Shown here: in pieces, positions 1 through 21,365 of the stretch | Layout: every line of letters starts with the position of its first letter | How positions within the stretch are numbered: position 1 is the stretch's first letter | Source of the DNA: Octopus sinensis | Taxonomy: Eukaryota | Reading direction: 5' to 3' | DNA: 26,294 bases | NCBI RefSeq assembly: GCF_006345805.1 | Contig: NW_021836540.1 | Location: 1 to 26,294 of the forward strand | Program-made: the position numbers and the translations under genes | The notes under the pieces: generated by a model | Told to the model about the DNA's origin: nothing | Database searches by the model: none | Seen by the model: only the letters and a program-made list of their open reading frames with translations

Positions 1-204
1 AGCGGTCACATAGACAGATGTGCATGAAATAAAAATCCAAAATTCACAACTTTCTCACTTTACCGATTCAATAACAACGTAACCATCACTCAACGTCATA
101 ACAAAGAGCTCCATTTCATTAGAAAATTCGAACCAAGTGTAAACACCCTGGGCCAGGAACATTAAAACCATATATTGGTTGTCCAAAAAGAAAAAAAAAA
201 GGAC

Positions 205-600
205 TTCTACAGCTCTAACTACCAGTACCACAACTACTACTTCTGCAAACAACGGTCTCTGCTACTGCTGCTATTACAGCCAACGGTCACTTCCATTTCT
301 AATACCACCACTACTACTACTACTACCACTACTACTACCACTACCACTACTACTACTATAGCCAATGAACTACTGCTACAACTCCAACCACCATGGTTAC
401 TACTACTACTACTACTACATACCAACTGTCACTTCCACTGCTGCTGCTACTACTACTACAGCCAATGAACTGCTGCTACAACTCCAACCACCACCACCAC
501 AACAACAACCACGGTCACTACTATTACTACTACGACCAACGGTCTCTGCTACTACTGCTATTACGGTCAACGGCCACTTTCACGATTACAGCCAACGATT
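205..600. repeat. Degenerate (ACT/CCA/GCT)n trinucleotide array with internal duplicated blocks
   Basis: CAACGGTC(A/T)CT recurs, and GCCAATGAACT(A/G)CTGCTACAACTCCAACCACCA occurs at ~361 and ~460. Confidence 0.85.
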
Positions 601-5792: not shown

Positions 5793-5916
5793 GGGGATAT
5801 ATATATATATATACATACATATATTATACATAGATATATATAATTATACATACATATTATACATATATATATATATACTACATATATATACTATATATAT
5901 ATATATATATACATAC

Positions 5917-5957
<41 letters not shown>

Positions 5958-6009
5958 TATATATACATACATATATATACATATATATATATATATATTA
6001 TATAAATAC
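4410..6009. repeat. Cluster of (AG)n, (TA)n, (CATA)n, (CA)n, (TG)n and (CT)n microsatellites
   Basis: Tracts at 4410-4453, 4985-5130, 5490-5590, 5752-5790 and 5800-6009. Confidence 0.9.
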
Positions 6010-6812
6010 AGTCCCCCCTTTCCCCCCCCCCTTTTTGCTCCCTCCTCCATTATTTTCTCTCTTTTCTTCTATTCCCTTCTCTATTCTTGGCCGCTCTAGA
6101 AAGCCCTTCAGCCTTTAAGAGTTAAATAGCTACAGCCTCTTGTGAATAGCAGTAATGTGATTAATATGGCAAACACCTAATCATATAACAAGTATTGGTA
6201 CCTACCTCATTGTGTTCAACCATTGTAAAATTTATCGCCTGTGAATATGAAATTCATCTCCATTTCTCTGGAAATTTACATCTACACCATTGGAATCTGT
6301 GCATATATACAAAGGATTAATTCACCCTCTCTGTAATGCTAATAACAATGGATAAATTTGTCTTCTGTGAGTATATAATCCCTCATCATATCTATGGAAA
6401 TTCATATGGATTAGGTCACCTTTCTGTGATGCTATCAAAACTTTTTTAAAATCTGTGATAAGACTGTACATCATCTTTAATGAACTTTAATGAACTTTAG
6501 AAATCTGTTTAATTATCTACATTACTTCATGAGTATAGCCTCAAACACTAGGATGTCTAGAGAACTTACATGTATTTTAGCTGATGAGTACGGGACTCGT
6601 TTATATGCTGTAATCTTTGCAACTTTTAATAAAACCTGTCCTTGTATGAAACGATCGTACTAAAAACCTATCCATTCTTGTTGCTTCTTTCTCGCTTATA
6701 ATCACCCCACATTACTGTATTGTTAAATCAGTATAGTTTTTTTTGGTGCATCTGAGTTAGGTACCATATTCAAGTAAATTTTTTTAAATTAACTTGAATC
6801 TTTATTGCTCTT
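6010..6812 (+). repeat. 5' pseudo-LTR (direct repeat copy 1)
   Basis: Runs from AGTCCCCCC to TTTATTGCTCTT. By eye it matches 10542-11341 with about 3-4 substitutions (e.g. CCGCTC/CCGATC, AAGTATT/AAGGATT, TCTGAG/TCTAAG) and about 6-7 small indels, mostly in homopolymers. Confidence 0.95.
6575..6665 (+). ncRNA. Type I hammerhead ribozyme (copy 1), predicted cleavage GUA^ after 6659
   Basis: Stem I TTTTAG(6575-80)/CTAAAA(6660-65); core CTGATGA(6581-87); stem II GTACGGGAC..GTCCTTGTAT(6588-6647, one bulge, G-U pairs); GAAA(6648-51); stem III AC-GATC-GT; cleavage triplet GTA(6657-59). Confidence 0.9.
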
Positions 6813-6868: not shown

Positions 6869-9699
6869 ATGGAAAAAGTAAACATTGAGTTCTCCCCTAA
6901 AGACATCCCCTTACATAGTATAGATGAATATAATTGGCTTCTCATTCATAGGATTAACGATTTCATTAGAAGAATCAGGTGGAAAACGTACCATTTTGAT
7001 GTCAAACAGAAGAAGAAACCTCAGGAAATGAATACCGAAAAGAATTTTAGAGAATTTTTAAAAGTAGAAAAAGCCCACCTCAGAACCCATTCCTGAGAAC
7101 TTTGAGAAAGACTTGCTGAATCTTATAGATGATATTAGCTTCAATGAACACCCGTTAAGATATAACCCTCACCTAGACACCTTAGGAACTTTATTCAGTC
7201 AACCCGGTGCAAACATGGAATCCTAGTACCAGCAGATAAAACGGGTAATATGTATAGAGTTGATTACGATATTATAGCAAATTAATTAGGAAAGAACTAA
7301 ACTCCAAATATAAATTACAACTGAGAACAATTTGAAAAAAGTAAACATGGAAATGAAAGAGATCATGGAGAAACTAAATTTAACAGATAGAACGGAGCCA
7401 CTTAACCCTGTGAGCCCAGGATCAACCTTAAAGACCACAAAAAGGACTTCTTGGATAACCCTTCAGTAAGGCTGATCTGTCCAACTAAGTCGGACATTGG
7501 CCGACTTAGTAAATCTATCCTGGATACTGTTCTACCCCAAATAACCCCCCTTCTCCCCTTAAACCTATGGCTAAGTACCGACGAAGTTCTAAAATGGTTT
7601 AACTCTCTAACTAATACTAGTAGTCTGTCCTTTATTCAGTTCGATATTAATAGTTATTACTCTAGCATTTCCCCTATCTTACTCAACAAATCACTAATAT
7701 TTGCCATGAATCGCTCCCTCATAACTAGAGAAGAAATCAATATTGTGCTACTAGCTAGGAAGACATTTATTGAATTTGAAGATAAATTATGGACTAGAGC
7801 AGATACACCAAATTTTTGATATACCAATGGGTTCCAGTGATTCGGCTGAGGTAACCAACCTAGTAGGCGCATATCTATTAAAATGCATAAGCAAGGATAT
7901 CCCAGAAATACTGGGGGTCTATATAGGGATGATGCTCTGTTTGTTATCCCTAGTAATAATAAATCTGTTATAGAAAGGATTAGAAGAAAAATTAATAAGT
8001 TCTTTAAGGATTTCAACCTCAGTATAACGTATGAACCGGGCACTAAAATAGCTAATTTCCTAGATATTACCCTAGACCTTAACTCCAAGCTACATTACCC
8101 ATTTAGAAAGGAAGGCGAAGTCACGAATTACGTAAATAAATTATCAAATCATCCCCCAAATATAATAGAATCTTTAGTAAGAAATATTTCATTAAGAATT
8201 TCAAAATTATCATCCAATAAGGATATATTTAACTCCCATTCTGAGCATTATAATGCGGCGTTAACTAAGGCTGGATACAACCAAAAGATTACATTCGTTG
8301 ATAGGGAGAACTCACGTATTCCTAATAATGAAGTTATCAGTAATCACGTAAGCAGCAAAAAGACCAAGCCCGAAATAAAAGTAGAATTAAATTAACGGTA
8401 AACGCTAATCTAGAGTACAGGCCCAACAATTCAAATAGAAGCATTGACCAGAACATAGGTAACTCGGATAAGATTGAAGTAGATAAACCTAAGATGCACA
8501 CAAATAAAAATAAAAATAATGGTAATAAATACAATAACTCCGGTGAGATGAATAGTAGTAATTCTACGAACCCTAAATTTAATAAAAAAGATATATTATG
8601 GCTGAATATTCCTTTCAACTGTGCGATACAATCGGATATACAGAACAAATTCAAAGTGATTCTGGAAAAAAATTTCCCTATCTCTCATAGATATCATAGA
8701 ATTATTTCTAGGAAAACAGTTAGGATTTCTTATTCAACCCTCCCAAATATGTCCACTTTAATAGCTAAAATTAATAATAACAACATTAAACTAGCCAGGA
8801 AAGATAGAAATAAAAATAATAATATCAGAATGAATACCAATAGCAATAACAATAATACTACTAACAATAAAACAGCAATAGGAACTATCAAAACATAGGT
8901 GAAATTAGTAACCACAGAATGACTAATAACATTAACATTAATAGTAATAATAACAATGCCGATATTAATAGAAGTAATATTGTTAATAATAGAAATAATA
9001 GAAATAAGGCTAATGGAGAAAATAAGGAGAATGAAAATATCAGTGATATCTATAACAATAATATACAGTTGATAAAAAGACTAACAATAATAATAACATT
9101 ACGAATAATATAAGAAATCTTGGTAGGACTTTACACCTAAATGATGAAACGGAAGGATCAATAAATAATAACAATACTTTAGATATCAGTACCAACTATA
9201 GAAATGATAATCAAAATAATAGGAACCTTAAACATCTACCCAGGAATAATCCAAGGCCTGAAGTTGTTCCTCCTGTGTGTAAGTGTAGAATAAAATCAAA
9301 ATGCCCGGCACCTGGTCTATGTAGGGAAATAATGTAATCTATAAATGTACCATATCCACGGAGAATAACAAATATTTTTACATTGGCTGTACAATTAATT
9401 TTTTAGCCAGAGTTAGAAATCACATCTCGACTTTTAAATTACGTCATAAAGCTGGTACCACCACACTTTCAAACAAAATCTGGGAACTCAAAAATAATAA
9501 CAAAAATTATACCCTTAATTGGGAAATAGTTAGGAGAGCAATTCCGTATAAAAATAGTAGGGTTGGTTGTCAACTATGCTCCATGGAGACGTACGAAATT
9601 CTAAAGCATAGTAAACATAGAAACTTATTGAATAACCATATCGAACTAGGTCAAGTTTGTGTCCACGCTAAATTGAAGACTTTAAAATATTTTAAATGA
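6869..9699 (+). pseudogene. PLE polyprotein: reverse transcriptase plus C-terminal GIY-YIG endonuclease, frameshifted as given (about 946 aa if repaired)
   Basis: Manual translation across frames gives, in order: MEKVNIEFSPKDIP..FIRRIRWK, FEKDLLNLI, ILVPADKTGNMY, INLKDHKKDFLDNPSVRLICPTKS, RT motif A QFDINSYYSSI, motif B FDIPMGSSDSAEVTNLVG, motif C GLYRDD, NFLDITLDL, SNHPPNI, WLNIPF, ISYSTLPNM, CKCRIKSKCP..GLC, VIYKC..FYIGCT..RVRNH, CQLCSME, LLN..E..CVH, then TGA at 9697-9699. Confidence 0.92.
9270..9699 (+). CDS. GIY-YIG endonuclease domain of the PLE (missed by the ORF track)
   Basis: Frame 1 from 9328 reads NNVIYKCTISTENNKYFYIGCTINFLARVRNHISTFKLRHKAGTTTLSNKIWELKNNNKNYTLNWEIVRRAIPYKNSRVGCQLCSMETYEILKHSKHRNLLNNHIELGQVCVHAKLKTLKYFK*. 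The VIY/YIG pair and candidate catalytic R, E and N are present. A Cys-rich CKCR..CP..C segment precedes it in the adjacent frame. Confidence 0.9.
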
Positions 9700-10541: not shown

Positions 10542-11341
10542 AGTCCCCCTTCCCCCCCCCCTTTTTGCTCCCTCCTCCATTATTTTCTCTCTTTTCTTCT
10601 ATTCCCTTCTCTATTCTTGGCCGATCTAGAAAGCCCTTCAGCCTTTAAGAGTTAAATAGCTACAGCCTCTTGTGAATAGCAGTAATGTGATTAATATGGC
10701 AAACACCTAATCATATAACAAGGATTGGTACCTACCTCATTGTGTTCAACCATTGTAAAATTTATCGCCTGTGAATATGAAATTCATCTCCATTTCTCTG
10801 GAAATTTACATCTACACCATTGGAATCTGTGCATATATACAAAGGATTAATTCACCCTCTCTGTAATGCTAATAACAATGGATAAATTTGTCTTCTGTGA
10901 GTATATAATCCCTCATCATATCTATGGAAATTCATATGGATTAGGTCACCTTCTCTGTGATGCTATCAAAACTTTTTTAAAATTCTGTGATAAGACTGTA
11001 CATCATCTTTAATGAACTTTAATGAACTTTAGAAATCTGTTTAATTATCTACATTACTTCATGAGTATAGCCTCAAACACTAGGATGTCTAGAGAACTTA
11101 CATGTATTTTAGCTGATGAGTACGGGACTCGTTTATATGCTGTAATCTTTGCAACTTTTAATAAAACCTGTCCTTGTATGAAACGATCGTACTAAAAACC
11201 TATCCATTCTTGTTGCTTCTTTCTCGCTTATAATCACCCCACATTACTGTATTGTTAATCAGTATAGTTTTTTGGTGCATCTAAGTTAGGTACCATATTC
11301 AAGTAAATTTTTTTTAATTAACTTGAATCTTTATTGCTCTT
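10542..11341 (+). repeat. 3' pseudo-LTR (direct repeat copy 2)
   Basis: Near-identical to 6010-6812 at an offset of about 4530-4532. It is preceded by a polypyrimidine tract (10436-10541) and ends abruptly in TA-rich microsatellite. Confidence 0.95.
11107..11197 (+). ncRNA. Type I hammerhead ribozyme (copy 2), predicted cleavage GUA^ after 11191
   Basis: Sequence identical to copy 1: CTGATGA 11113-19, GAAA 11180-83, GTA 11189-91, CTAAAA 11192-97. Confidence 0.9.
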
Positions 11342-11506
11342 GTATATACATAATAATATATACATATAATATATAATATATATATATTATACATACATAT
11401 ATATACATATATAATATATATAATATTAATATTACATACATACATATATATATATATTATATATACATAATATATATATATATATATATATAATAATTAC
11501 ATACAT

Positions 11507-11551
<45 letters not shown>

Positions 11552-11565
11552 GATATATATATAAT
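11342..11565. repeat. (TA)n/(TACA)n microsatellite, right flank of the PLE
   Basis: Read directly; same composition as the left flank 5800-6009. Confidence 0.95.
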
Positions 11566-12265
11566 ATTTGCACTTTCATTTTATATTTTTATCGGATTTT
11601 GGTTATAACATTGCGACTATATTAAATTCCGCCTTCCGTCAATCTTGCACTTAATTCACATTTGTGCTTTTCATTTTTTTTTTTTTTGTGATCTTCGTTT
11701 CTTGAGTCAAATTAGTTCTAACGCACGATTTTGAAACGAAGAGATGCAAGGCGAGACATCGATCCATATCTCTAAACCAGGAACCTACAAAATCACACGA
11801 AAACTTCAACATGCAGTCACTTTCTCTTACTTTCTCCTATCAAGAAAAAACAACAAAACACCAATGAATTTCGCCTTAAACTACTTCTCCAAAACAAAAT
11901 ACACTTTTACCAAACGTTCGCATCTGAAACAGTATTTCTACGAAAGACAACAGCGGGATGTTATTCCAGATATTCACTGAATGCACCAATTTCTGATCTT
12001 AACTGATCTTATTAAAAAACAAAAACGAATATTTTCCTCCAACCTTTTGAGAATGAACTATATTTTATAGCCAGAATTGTATGATATAATTAGTTTTTGC
12101 CTAAGCGAGCCCCACCATAAAATTGCTTTATTTAAAAAGACTAAAAACTTATTCATCAACGCTGATGCGTCTAAAAAAATGCTTGAAATCAATTTTGGCG
12201 AATATATCAAAATTCTTTCTAGTCATTTATTTCATTTACAAGGTTTGTCACAATGCGCTAAAAAA

Positions 12266-20749: not shown

Positions 20750-21365
20750 ATAGCAGTCAAATCTCCCTCAAATCATGAGTTACACTACCACCACAACCAC
20801 CACAAATTCCGTTATTCCTTCTACCGCCATCACCAACACACCGCAGTTGCCTTCATCAGCACTATCACAAGAACCACTGCCATTACAATCACCTCAACCA
20901 CCACAACCGCCCATACCGTTCCCTACAACAACCACCATCACCAATACCACTACAGCTACCATCTTCACTGCCATCACCAACGCCCATCAGCACCGCCTTC
21001 ACCACCTTTAACCACCAGAGCCGCCACCATTAACACTATACAACTTCAATCACCATCACCAACCATAAACACTGTCACAAGCACGGTTCTTATCACAATC
21101 ATCACCACCGCCGCCGCCGTTGCCGCTACCACCGAAATCACAACTACTACAACTACTACTGCTACTACTACTACTAATAATACTAATACTAATAATAATA
21201 ATAATAATGATAATAATAATAATACAACTACTACAACTACTACTACTACTAATAATAATAATAATAATATTAATAACAATAATAATAATATTAATAACAA
21301 TAATAATAATACAACTACTACTACTGTTGCTGCTGCTGCTGCTGCTGCCACCAATAGCGTCGCCA
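20750..21365. repeat. Degenerate (CAC)n leading into (ACT)n/(AAT)n/(GCT)n trinucleotide arrays
   Basis: Read directly; generates the open low-complexity ORFs in several frames. Confidence 0.9.

What the first reader, a model, noticed from the sequence alone, without database searches (positions are those of the whole stretch)
6575..6665. Hammerhead ribozyme with a palindromic mini-stem III and an atypically long ~60-nt stem II, in both pLTRs
Seen: the complete core (CUGAUGA, GAAA, GUA triplet) and a 6-bp stem I. Stem II spans 6588-6647 with outer helix GUACGGGAC/GUCC(U)UGUAU and possible inner helices GUUUAU/AUAAA(A)C and UGC/GCA. The motif is 100% identical at 11107-11197. Established: PLE pLTRs often carry minimal type I hammerheads with tiny stem III, usually with a short stem II. 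Inference: this extended-stem-II variant would escape length-limited motif searches, and the extra domain could be a protein-binding or regulatory module. It may define a ribozyme subtype for this PLE lineage.
Basis: partly seen in the sequence, partly recalled or inferred. Interest (0 to 1): 0.85.

Follow-up and report, generated by a model that had tools for sequence, protein, structure and literature searches.

The report
Long-armed hammerhead ribozyme in octopus retrotransposon
Both terminal repeats of a decayed Penelope-like retrotransposon from an octopus-type genome carry a genuine hammerhead ribozyme motif whose second helix is about 60 nt long, a trait shared by related octopod elements but absent from their nearest sampled relatives, so it is a new structural variant of a known ribozyme whose activity is still untested.

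Summary
Window 6575-6665 and 11107-11197 are identical type I hammerhead motifs. Each has a 6-bp stem I, the CUGAUGA and GAAA core halves, the palindrome ACGAUCGU and a GUA cleavage triplet (cut after A6659/A11191). A 60-nt insert occupies stem II.

They lie in the ~800-nt pseudo-LTRs of a frameshifted Penelope-like element (reverse transcriptase plus a Cys-rich linker plus a GIY-YIG endonuclease) inserted in a (TA)n microsatellite.

Related copies in Octopus sinensis, O. bimaculoides and Argonauta hians keep a 58-62-nt stem II:
- Stem I and the outer stem II helix covary.
- The stem III palindrome occurs in three versions.
- The only core position that varies is the free N7.

Every hammerhead recognised in 80 related elements from marine metagenomes (about 28 loci) has a stem II of roughly 10-25 nt. 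The extension is therefore real, selected and lineage-specific.

The window's own stem II is the weakest of the set. Catalysis, dimer dependence and any protein-binding or regulatory role are untested. Rfam misses it, but Rfam also misses the short PLE hammerheads. Verdict: new variant of a known kind, moderate interest.

The parts
6010..6812 (+). 5' pseudo-LTR (a partial upstream tandem copy of the element's 3' part)
   Evidence: 98.4% identical to 10542-11341. The right edge, TTATTGCTCTT, was fixed.
10542..11341 (+). 3' pseudo-LTR
6575..6665 (+). Hammerhead motif, copy 1 (type I, open stem I)
   Evidence: 94.8 bits with family model R1
11107..11197 (+). Hammerhead motif, copy 2, identical to copy 1
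6575..6580 (+). Stem I, 5' strand UUUUAG; pairs with 6660-6665 CUAAAA
   Evidence: Four of six pairs show changes on both sides among relatives, for example A-U / G.U / G-C at 6579:6661.
6581..6587 (+). Core C3-A9, CUGAUGA
   Evidence: Invariant except N7, which is U, G or C in win, L001 and L007.
6588..6647 (+). Extended stem II (60 nt). Outer helix: 6588-6596 with 6638-6647, U6642 bulged. AU-rich middle part. Apical hairpin.
   Evidence: folds; 5-7 of the 9 outer pairs change on both sides.
6607..6623 (+). Apical hairpin of stem II, GCUGUAA-UCU-UUGCAAC (7 bp, mismatch C6608xA6622)
   Evidence: Perfect 7 bp in O. sinensis copies. Hairpins of different sequence sit at the same place in L001 and L007. 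Predicted independently by RNAalifold.
6648..6651 (+). Core G12-A15.1, GAAA
6651..6658 (+). 8-nt palindrome ACGAUCGU. As a monomer it gives only 2 bp plus a GAUC loop. In a dimer it gives an 8-bp intermolecular helix III.
   Evidence: The inner hexamer occurs in three palindromic versions: CGAUCG, CGUACG and CAAUUG.
6659..6660 (+). Predicted scissile bond (after A17 = A6659; the second site is 11191/11192)
   Evidence: Follows from hammerhead numbering applied. Not tested.
6670..6686 (+). Box ATCCATTCTTGTTGCTT just 3' of the ribozyme; conserved in all family copies and close to the alternative 3' terminus near 6700
6869..9696 (+). Remnant of the single PLE ORF (RT with YRDD, Asn-rich linker, CxC..C..C motif, GIY-YIG); broken by several frameshifts and stops
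5797..6008 (.). (TA)n-rich microsatellite flanking the insertion on the left (its partner is 11343-11567)

Best explanation
This is the type I hammerhead ribozyme that canonical endonuclease-bearing Penelope-like elements carry in their pseudo-LTRs. It takes a form specific to octopod PLE families, in which helix II has grown into a roughly 60-nt, three-tier imperfect hairpin.

Shown:
- The motif, its duplication and its PLE context.
- Selection for pairing in stem I and in the outer helix II.
- Retention of a palindromic helix III.
- Restriction of the long helix II to the octopod copies in the sample examined.

Inferred mechanism:
- On read-through or tandem transcripts, two copies pair through ACGAUCGU to form a shared 8-bp helix III. 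As a monomer only 2 bp can form.
- Each core then cleaves after A17 (A6659 and A11191). This leaves a 5'-OH at C6660, 209 nt upstream of the ATG, and releases a unit-length 4532-nt RNA.
- The long helix II most likely acts as a rigid, coaxially stacking arm. It would stabilise an AU-rich core that lacks the loop-loop tertiary contacts of canonical hammerheads. Its sequence is free to drift as long as pairing is kept, which is what the divergent copies show.

The window copy itself belongs to a dead element with a broken ORF and has the weakest helix II of the set. It may therefore cleave poorly or not at all.
For: - Complete core and geometry. Chance expectation is 0.05 per window.
- PLE context: pLTRs; RT, Cys linker and GIY-YIG; octopod homologues; inverted 5'-truncated partner copies in L004 and L007; a (TA)n target, as described for PLEs in PMC8557442.
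- Covariation: 85.8% of cells paired against 35-45% in slid controls; 9 pairs with double changes against 1-5; 0/500 shuffles reach the observed score. The 7-sequence model-fitted alignment gives the same picture. RNAalifold recovers stem I, the outer helix II and the apical hairpin.
- Palindrome variants CGAUCG, CGUACG and CAAUUG. The CGAUCG-to-CGUACG change cannot be explained by CpG decay.
- Only N7 varies in the core.
- Stem II of the relatives folds as one long hairpin with z = -3 to -5.
- Related metagenomic PLEs have hammerheads in the same place, about 160-200 nt upstream of the ATG, with a 10-25-nt stem II. They show 21 descriptor hits and 19 model hits on the coding strand, and none on the other strand with the descriptor.
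- Dimer dependence and low in vitro activity of PLE hammerheads are described in PMC4209133 and PMC6765202.
Against: - No cleavage data exist.
- In the window copy, 10.1-11.1 is G.U rather than the canonical G-C. G.U and A-U are, however, common in this PLE lineage.
- The hammerhead-competent monomer fold is 4.3 kcal/mol above the MFE, which instead uses a competing GUAC/GUAC pairing.
- Stem II of the window copy is only marginally better than shuffles (z about -1.7 to -2).
- Several relatives carry inactivating changes: GGAA in L002, G17 in L006, a non-palindromic CAAAUG in L004inv, and a 13-nt deletion in the L004 3' copy.
- Genomic copies end at about 6700 or 6812, not at the cut site 6659. 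The template for integration therefore retained sequence 3' of the ribozyme.
- Naiad PLEs proliferate without hammerheads (PMC8557442), so the ribozyme may be dispensable.
Confidence: 0.7

Rival explanations
1. The stem II extension is a functional module in its own right. It could be a recognition site for the element's RT/EN protein, or for a host protein, near the 3' end of the RNA. Alternatively it could be a switch whose folding gates formation of the core-proximal helix II, making it a natural counterpart of engineered stem II aptazymes. The ribozyme scaffold and the module would then be read together.
For: - Within the closer copies, the apical hairpin and the following UUUAAAUAAA tract are more conserved in sequence than the covarying outer helix. 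Helix 3 shows almost no double changes.
- The motif lies 41 nt from a recurrent 3' terminus and next to a strongly conserved box at 6670-6686.
- A conserved self-complementary GUAC at both the base of stem II and the cut site allows an alternative inactive fold.
Against: - In the more distant copies (L001, L004:4999-5067, L007) the apical hairpin has a different sequence. What persists is the shape, not the letters.
- No known RNA family or motif matches the insert.
- Nothing here tests binding.
Confidence: 0.2
2. This is a relic only. The hammerhead was functional in the ancestor of the family, but in this lineage it has been inactivated by a sequence that grew inside helix II. It persists because it hitch-hikes in a repeat, and the apparent structure reflects shared descent.
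For: - The window element is dead.
- Many copies carry core or helix defects.
- In vitro activity of PLE hammerheads is low even for short forms (PMC4209133).
- Hammerheads may simply parasitise PLEs (discussion in PMC8557442).
Against: - Copies from families only 38-45% identical at protein level keep an intact core, a palindromic helix III and a long helix II that pairs, each with quite different sequence.
- Double compensatory changes exceed all slid and shuffled controls.
- Variation in the core is confined to N7.
Confidence: 0.08
3. It is not a ribozyme at all: two hammerhead core half-sites happen to flank a conserved LTR element. This would resemble the 'HHR_half_core' cases with 35-50-nt spacing noted for Naiads.
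For: - Rfam hammerhead models give no hit even at E <= 10.
- The 91-nt fold is not better than shuffles.
Against: - The Rfam negative is uninformative, because bona fide short PLE hammerheads are also missed.
- The chance rate is 0.05 per window.
- Stem I and stem II covary, and the helix III palindrome is conserved.
- The motif occupies the same position as the hammerheads of related PLEs.
Confidence: 0.02

Closest known systems
Minimal and atypical type I hammerheads of Penelope-like element pLTRs (Cervera & de la Pena 2014, PMC4209133; Lunse, Weinberg & Breaker 2017, cited in PMC6765202)
   Same: Located in both pLTRs of an RT plus GIY-YIG element. Type I topology, 4-6 bp helix I, a vestigial helix III with a palindromic insert that implies dimeric action, and no loop-loop tertiary contacts.
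   Different: Helix II is 58-62 nt (about 20 or more bp in three tiers), against the 6-8 bp described there and the 10-25 nt in the relatives surveyed here. There is no obvious bulged nucleotide between A9 and 10.1. In the window copy 10.1-11.1 is G.U.
Hammerheads active as dimers in newt satellite 2 and avocado sunblotch viroid (Forster et al. 1988, as cited in PMC4209133)
   Same: A weak monomeric helix III with a palindromic loop, so that two copies can build one extended helix III.
   Different: Those have short helices I and II with tertiary loop contacts, and lie in short tandem repeats or circular RNAs rather than 4.5 kb apart in a retrotransposon.
'HHR_half_core' cases in Naiad PLEs (Craig et al. 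2021, PMC8557442, Methods)
   Same: The CUGANGA and GAAA halves are separated by far more than standard descriptors allow (35-50 nt there, 60 nt here).
   Different: Those were not accepted as hammerheads because the stems did not fit. Here all three helices fit and covary, and the element is a C-terminal-EN PLE, not a Naiad.
Engineered allosteric hammerheads (aptazymes) with an aptamer grafted on stem II (own knowledge; the class is reviewed in PMC10353319)
   Same: A large folded domain replaces loop II, and its folding determines whether the core-proximal helix II forms.
   Different: Those are synthetic. No ligand or protein partner is known or indicated here.
Discontinuous or large-insert natural hammerheads (rodent Clec2 3'UTR, mammalian HH10; own knowledge, not checked here)
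   Same: They show that hammerhead cores tolerate very long insertions in a peripheral helix.
   Different: In those the insertions are in stem I or in loops, in cellular genes. They are not in helix II of a transposon ribozyme.

Membership tests
Hammerhead ribozyme (type I) | Conserved core C3-U-G-A-N-G-A9, G12-A-A14, A15.1-U16.1 and H17 | tested here: met
   CUGAUGA 6581-6587, GAAA 6648-6651, U6658, A6659. Among relatives only N7 varies.
Hammerhead ribozyme (type I) | Helices I and II flank the core and are supported by covariation | tested here: met
   Stem I has 4 of 6 pairs and outer stem II has 5-7 of 9 pairs with changes on both sides. Overall 86% of cells are paired against 33-45% in slid controls.
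Hammerhead ribozyme (type I) | Helix III closing the core | tested here: inconclusive
   As a monomer only A-U and C-G around a GAUC loop can form. An 8-bp helix is possible only between two copies. The palindrome is kept in three sequence versions. Dimer formation itself is not testable here.
Hammerhead ribozyme (type I) | G10.1-C11.1 base pair | tested here: not met
   The window has G6588.U6647. Relatives have A-U, G-C or UxC. In related PLE hammerheads the counts are G-C 9, A-U 4 and G.U 4. The pair is conserved in the family at large but is not obligatory (PMC3088659 reports active U-U variants).
Hammerhead ribozyme (type I) | Match to the curated Rfam covariance models | tested here: inconclusive
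   No hit at the gathering score or at E <= 10. The short PLE hammerheads used as controls are also missed at E <= 1.
Hammerhead ribozyme (type I) | Site-specific Mg2+-dependent self-cleavage giving 2',3'-cyclic phosphate and 5'-OH ends | not testable with these tools
   Requires transcription and cleavage assays.
Penelope-like element, C-terminal EN+ (Neptune/Nematis-like) | [quoted passage not shown] | tested here: met
   YRDD fragment at 7850-8392; GIY-YIG at 9325-9696 (Pfam E = 0.0017, below the gathering score); intact 922-aa ORF at L004:5916-8681. The conserved motifs GLYRDD, IVYK..YIG and CxxC are present in alignment A6. Pfam and PDB searches with the whole ORF or its profile found nothing.
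Penelope-like element, C-terminal EN+ (Neptune/Nematis-like) | Pseudo-LTRs from partial tandem insertion, often with an inverted 5'-truncated partner | tested here: met
   Window repeats. Inverted partners at L004:5587-5777 and L007:2936.
Penelope-like element, C-terminal EN+ (Neptune/Nematis-like) | CX2-5CxxC linker upstream of GIY-YIG, and a microsatellite target | tested here: met
   CKCRIKSKCPAPGLC. C794, C796, C802 and C808 are nearly invariant in A6. (TA)n lies at both flanks and at the ends of the L001, L002 and L004 copies. The criteria come from PMC8557442.
Penelope-like element, C-terminal EN+ (Neptune/Nematis-like) | Phylogenetic placement of the RT within a named PLE clade | not tested
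PLE 'min-HHR' as defined by Cervera & de la Pena 2014 | Short helix II (6-8 bp) with an unpaired nucleotide between A9 and 10.1 | tested here: not met
   Stem II is 60 nt, and position 10.1 pairs and covaries. The motif works like a min-HHR but does not fit that descriptor.

The most novel reading that the evidence does not exclude
The 60-nt helix II may be a protein- or RT-recognition or gating domain grafted onto the ribozyme, making this a natural 'aptazyme'-like hammerhead. In that reading it couples cleavage, and possibly ligation into a unit-length circle, to RNP assembly.

Reverse transcription would start at the conserved box and 3' terminus about 41 nt downstream of the cut site and run more than once around the circular or multimeric RNA. 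That would generate the pseudo-LTR architecture itself.
Probability: 0.12. Interest if true: 0.8.

Novelty: new variant of a known kind. Interest (0 to 1): 0.45.

Why it matters
The role of hammerheads in Penelope-like elements is still unknown, and published censuses use descriptors that cap the length of helix II. A lineage in which selection has kept a helix II three to six times the usual length has three consequences:
- PLE hammerhead counts in cephalopods, and possibly elsewhere, are underestimates.
- It offers a natural test of how much peripheral structure a minimal, dimer-dependent hammerhead tolerates or needs.
- It provides a handle, the extra domain, for asking whether the ribozyme is read by the element's own protein.

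The recurrent 3' termini 41 nt beyond the cut site also constrain models of what the cleavage is for.

Tried and rejected
- Rfam at the gathering score and at E <= 10 found no hammerhead, only trivial C/D-box-like matches to UGAUGA. The negative was shown to be uninformative.
- Pfam on the window ORF fragments, on the intact L004 ORF and on all members of A6 gave only a sub-threshold GIY-YIG hit. A PDB profile search gave nothing.
- Pfam on other window ORFs gave nothing.
- Folding energy of the 91-nt motif is not significant. The predicted dimer MFE does not adopt the hammerhead fold, so thermodynamics were not used as support for this copy.
- A 64-nt stem II hit in metagenomic locus L036 was rejected. 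It lies 2.8 kb beyond the PLE unit, whose true hammerhead (25-nt stem II) is at L036:38-88 and is repeated 2496 nt downstream.
- I considered that the CGATCG-to-CAATTG change is covariation. It can equally arise from CpG decay on both strands, so only the CGAUCG/CGUACG difference was counted as real.
- Lunse et al. 2017 (PMC5785218) could not be read.
- No hammerhead was found in Argonauta locus L003 or in Logan contig L008. In L008 the flanks are too short for one to be expected; L003 was not examined further.

Full report
**1. What is in the sequence**

On the + strand the window reads as follows:
- UUUUAG (6575-6580)
- CUGAUGA (6581-6587)
- a 60-nt segment (6588-6647)
- GAAA (6648-6651)
- CGAUCG (6652-6657)
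- U6658 and A6659
- CUAAAA (6660-6665)

This is the full type I hammerhead layout. Stem I has 6 bp. Both core strands are present. A15.1 and U16.1 flank a palindromic hexamer. The cleavage triplet is GUA, with the scissile bond after A6659.

The same 91 nt recur at 11107-11197, inside a 275-nt block of perfect identity. A permissive descriptor finds only these two sites in the window on either strand. The same descriptor gives 0.05 hits per dinucleotide-shuffled window.

**2. Context**

The motifs lie in direct repeats 6010-6812 and 10542-11341, which are 98.4% identical. Between the repeats are:
- reverse-transcriptase fragments, including GGLYRDD
- an Asn-rich low-complexity stretch
- a CKCRIKSKCPAPGLC motif
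- a GIY-YIG domain (VIYKCT...YIGCT; Pfam E = 0.0017)

All are on the + strand but in shifting frames, so this copy is dead. The ATG is at 6869, 209 nt after the predicted cut. The insertion sits in a (TA)n microsatellite on both sides.

The protein fragments match predicted proteins of Octopus bimaculoides, O. sinensis and Argonauta hians. An O. sinensis locus holds an intact 922-aa ORF of the same family (L004:5916-8681).

Several features identify a C-terminal-EN Penelope-like element of the Neptune/Nematis kind, using the criteria of PMC8557442 and PMC4209133:
- a single RT plus Cys-linker plus GIY-YIG ORF
- pseudo-LTRs
- inverted 5'-truncated partner copies (L004, L007)
- a (TA)n target
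- a hammerhead in the repeats

Clade placement by phylogeny was not done. Pfam and PDB searches with the full ORF or its profile gave nothing.

**3. Is the long stem II real?**

For the window copy alone, thermodynamics are weak:
- The 91-nt fold has z = -0.8, and its MFE is a competing fold.

The case rests on relatives. Homologous motifs were recovered from the following loci.

| Copy | Species | Stem II | Notable features |
|---|---|---|---|
| L002:8862-8950 | O. sinensis | 58 nt | GGAA core mutation |
| L004:5623-5713 (-) | O. sinensis | 60 nt | CAAAUG, not palindromic |
| L004:9797-9874 | O. sinensis | 47 nt | 13-nt deletion |
| L006:9730-9819 | O. sinensis | 59 nt | G at position 17 |
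| L004:4999-5067 (-) | O. sinensis | 58 nt | 5'-truncated copy |
| L001:4826-4915 (-) | O. bimaculoides | 59 nt | CUGAGGA core, G10.1-C11.1, CGUACG |
| L007, three identical copies | Argonauta hians | 62 nt | CUGACGA core, CAAUUG |

The five-sequence MAFFT alignment (A5) gave these results:
- 85.8% of cells form standard pairs, against 35-45% when partners are slid.
- 9 pairs change on both sides, 4 in stem I and 5 in the outer stem II helix, against 1-5 in slid controls.
- The covariation score is 0.404, against at most 0.158 in slid controls, and no shuffle out of 500 reaches it.
- RNAalifold independently predicts stem I, the outer stem II helix and the apical hairpin.

A seven-sequence alignment fitted to the model gives the same picture, with 12 pairs changed on both sides. 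That alignment leans toward the structure by construction.

Stem II of the relatives folds as one long imperfect hairpin, with z between -3.0 and -5.1 and -2.7 for Argonauta. The apical 7-bp hairpin is:
- GCUGCAA/UUGCAGC in O. sinensis
- UGUAGUG/CACUACA in O. bimaculoides
- GCUGUAA/UUGCAAC, with one mismatch, in the window

The window copy is therefore a slightly degraded member of a family whose helix II is a selected, roughly 20-bp, three-tier rod.

**4. Other hammerhead signatures**

- The only core position that varies among the diverged copies is N7 (U, G or C). This is exactly the unconstrained position.
- The helix III insert occurs as CGAUCG, CGUACG and CAAUUG, and all three are palindromes. 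CAAUUG could arise from CpG decay on both strands. The central AU-to-UA swap cannot.
- As a monomer helix III is 2 bp with a 4-nt loop. Two copies can form an 8-bp ACGAUCGU duplex. This matches the dimer model for PLE and newt hammerheads (PMC4209133, PMC6765202).
- Position 10.1-11.1 is G.U in the window. The pair covaries (A-U, G-C, G.U). In related PLE hammerheads G.U and A-U are common.

**5. Is the length atypical?**

Published PLE hammerheads have a helix II of 6-8 bp (PMC4209133).

I fetched 80 loci encoding relatives of the ORF (33-42% identity) from marine metagenomes.
- A descriptor allowing stem II up to 150 nt found 21 hits in 18 loci on the coding strand and none on the opposite strand. 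Stem II was 10-25 nt in 20 of the 21.
- The single 64-nt hit lies outside the PLE unit, whose real hammerhead has a 25-nt stem II.
- The octopus-derived model R1 found 19 hammerheads of 41-58 nt total length, all on the coding strand, in 17 loci; about ten of these loci were not among the descriptor's 18.
- No long form was seen outside octopods. The remaining loci are mostly short contigs with little flanking sequence, so absence of a hit there says little.

**6. Would it escape searches?**

Rfam finds nothing. Rfam also misses the short PLE hammerheads, so that failure is not due to length. Length-limited descriptors would miss it. Craig et al. used a 7-17 nt spacer and set aside eight 'half-core' cases with 35-50 nt (PMC8557442).

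**7. How it probably works**

Shown: the anatomy, the selection on pairing and the lineage restriction.

Inferred:
- The motif is a dimer-dependent self-cleaving ribozyme acting on read-through or tandem PLE transcripts. Cuts at 6659/6660 and 11191/11192 would release a 4532-nt unit.
- The long helix II stacks coaxially on helix III and serves as a stabilising arm for an AU-rich core without tertiary loop contacts.

A protein-binding or gating role for the apical part is possible. The sequence there is more conserved than in the outer helix among close copies, and a competing GUAC/GUAC pairing is conserved. Nothing here tests that role.

One constraint emerged. Copies in L001, L002 and L004 (the inverted copy) end at (TA)n about 41 nt after the cut site, near window 6700. 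The window and L004 3' repeats run to about 6812. No 3' terminus coincides with the cut. The integration template therefore kept sequence downstream of the ribozyme. It was either uncleaved at its 3' ribozyme, or cleaved and re-joined.

**8. Verdict**

The motif is a new structural variant of a known ribozyme-transposon association. It is not a new kind of element. Activity and the function of the extension remain to be tested.

Noticed in passing
window 6700 and 6812; L001, L002, L004: Family copies have two classes of 3' terminus. One lies about 41 nt after the ribozyme cut site (...TTATA, then (TA)n). The other lies about 112 nt further on. Neither coincides with the cut site. The window's 3' repeat thus carries a 112-nt 'tail' equal to the start of the next unit.
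   Followed up: partly
window 6670-6686 and 11202-11218: The box ATCCATTCTTGTTGCTT, 5 nt downstream of stem I, is the best-conserved part of the repeat in all copies, including the divergent O. bimaculoides one. It may be a 3'-end recognition or promoter element.
   Followed up: no
window 8344-9334; L004:5916-8681: An Asn-rich low-complexity linker of roughly 250 aa lies between the RT and EN domains. It is also present in the intact O. sinensis ORF (922 aa). The metagenomic relatives are about 700 aa and lack it. It explains misleading database names such as 'GATA zinc finger domain-containing protein 14-like'.
   Followed up: partly
window 6869-9696: The PLE ORF is interrupted in five places: multiple stops in 7094-7405, and frame changes near 7816-7850, near 8392, in 8895-9062 and near 9334. 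The repeats are nevertheless 98.4% identical.
   Followed up: yes
L004:4999-5110 (minus strand): Two hammerhead-bearing PLE fragments meet head to head, with the junction inside the ribozyme: the reverse complement of GAAACGUA abuts a stem II, followed by GAAA-CGAUCG-UC. The same inverted tail, AAAATAAGCAACAAGGATATCCAGAGGTAATGCAG, also follows the (TA)n in L002.
   Followed up: partly
L007:5661, 8878 (+) and 2936 (-): Argonauta hians PLE has three identical hammerhead-like motifs with a 62-nt stem II, a CAAUUG palindrome, U at position 17 and only about 2 bp of stem I next to the core. Two of them flank the ORF 3217 nt apart, and one is inverted upstream.
   Followed up: partly
window 6588-6591 and 6657-6660: The self-complementary tetramer GUAC occurs both at the base of stem II and at the cleavage site. 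The predicted MFE of the monomer uses this alternative pairing, which is incompatible with the active fold. The arrangement is conserved in the relatives.
   Followed up: no
loci L015-L063: The Rfam 15 hammerhead models do not detect the short, palindromic-helix-III hammerheads of PLEs even at E <= 1. Rfam-based annotation therefore undercounts this class in general.
   Followed up: yes
L053:69-109 and 2516-2556; L036:38-88 and about 2534: Compact metagenomic PLE relatives carry two identical hammerheads exactly one unit apart (2447 nt and 2496 nt). Each lies about 160-200 nt upstream of the ATG, the same placement as in the window.
   Followed up: partly
L002:1921 and 2064: A CUGAUGA...GAAA pair lies inside an inverted-repeat region. 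Here CUGAUG pairs with a nearby CAUCAG, so it is probably an unrelated hairpin or repeat rather than a hammerhead.
   Followed up: no
window 6476-6495 (and 11008-11027): A 10-nt tandem duplication, TTTAATGAAC x2, lies inside the repeat, about 80 nt upstream of the ribozyme.
   Followed up: no
window 200-600 and 21100-21340: Long imperfect trinucleotide arrays (ACT/ACC/AAT) and many (TA)n, (CA)n and (GT)n microsatellites occur across the window. No Pfam domain was found in any ORF of 100 aa or more outside the PLE.
   Followed up: partly
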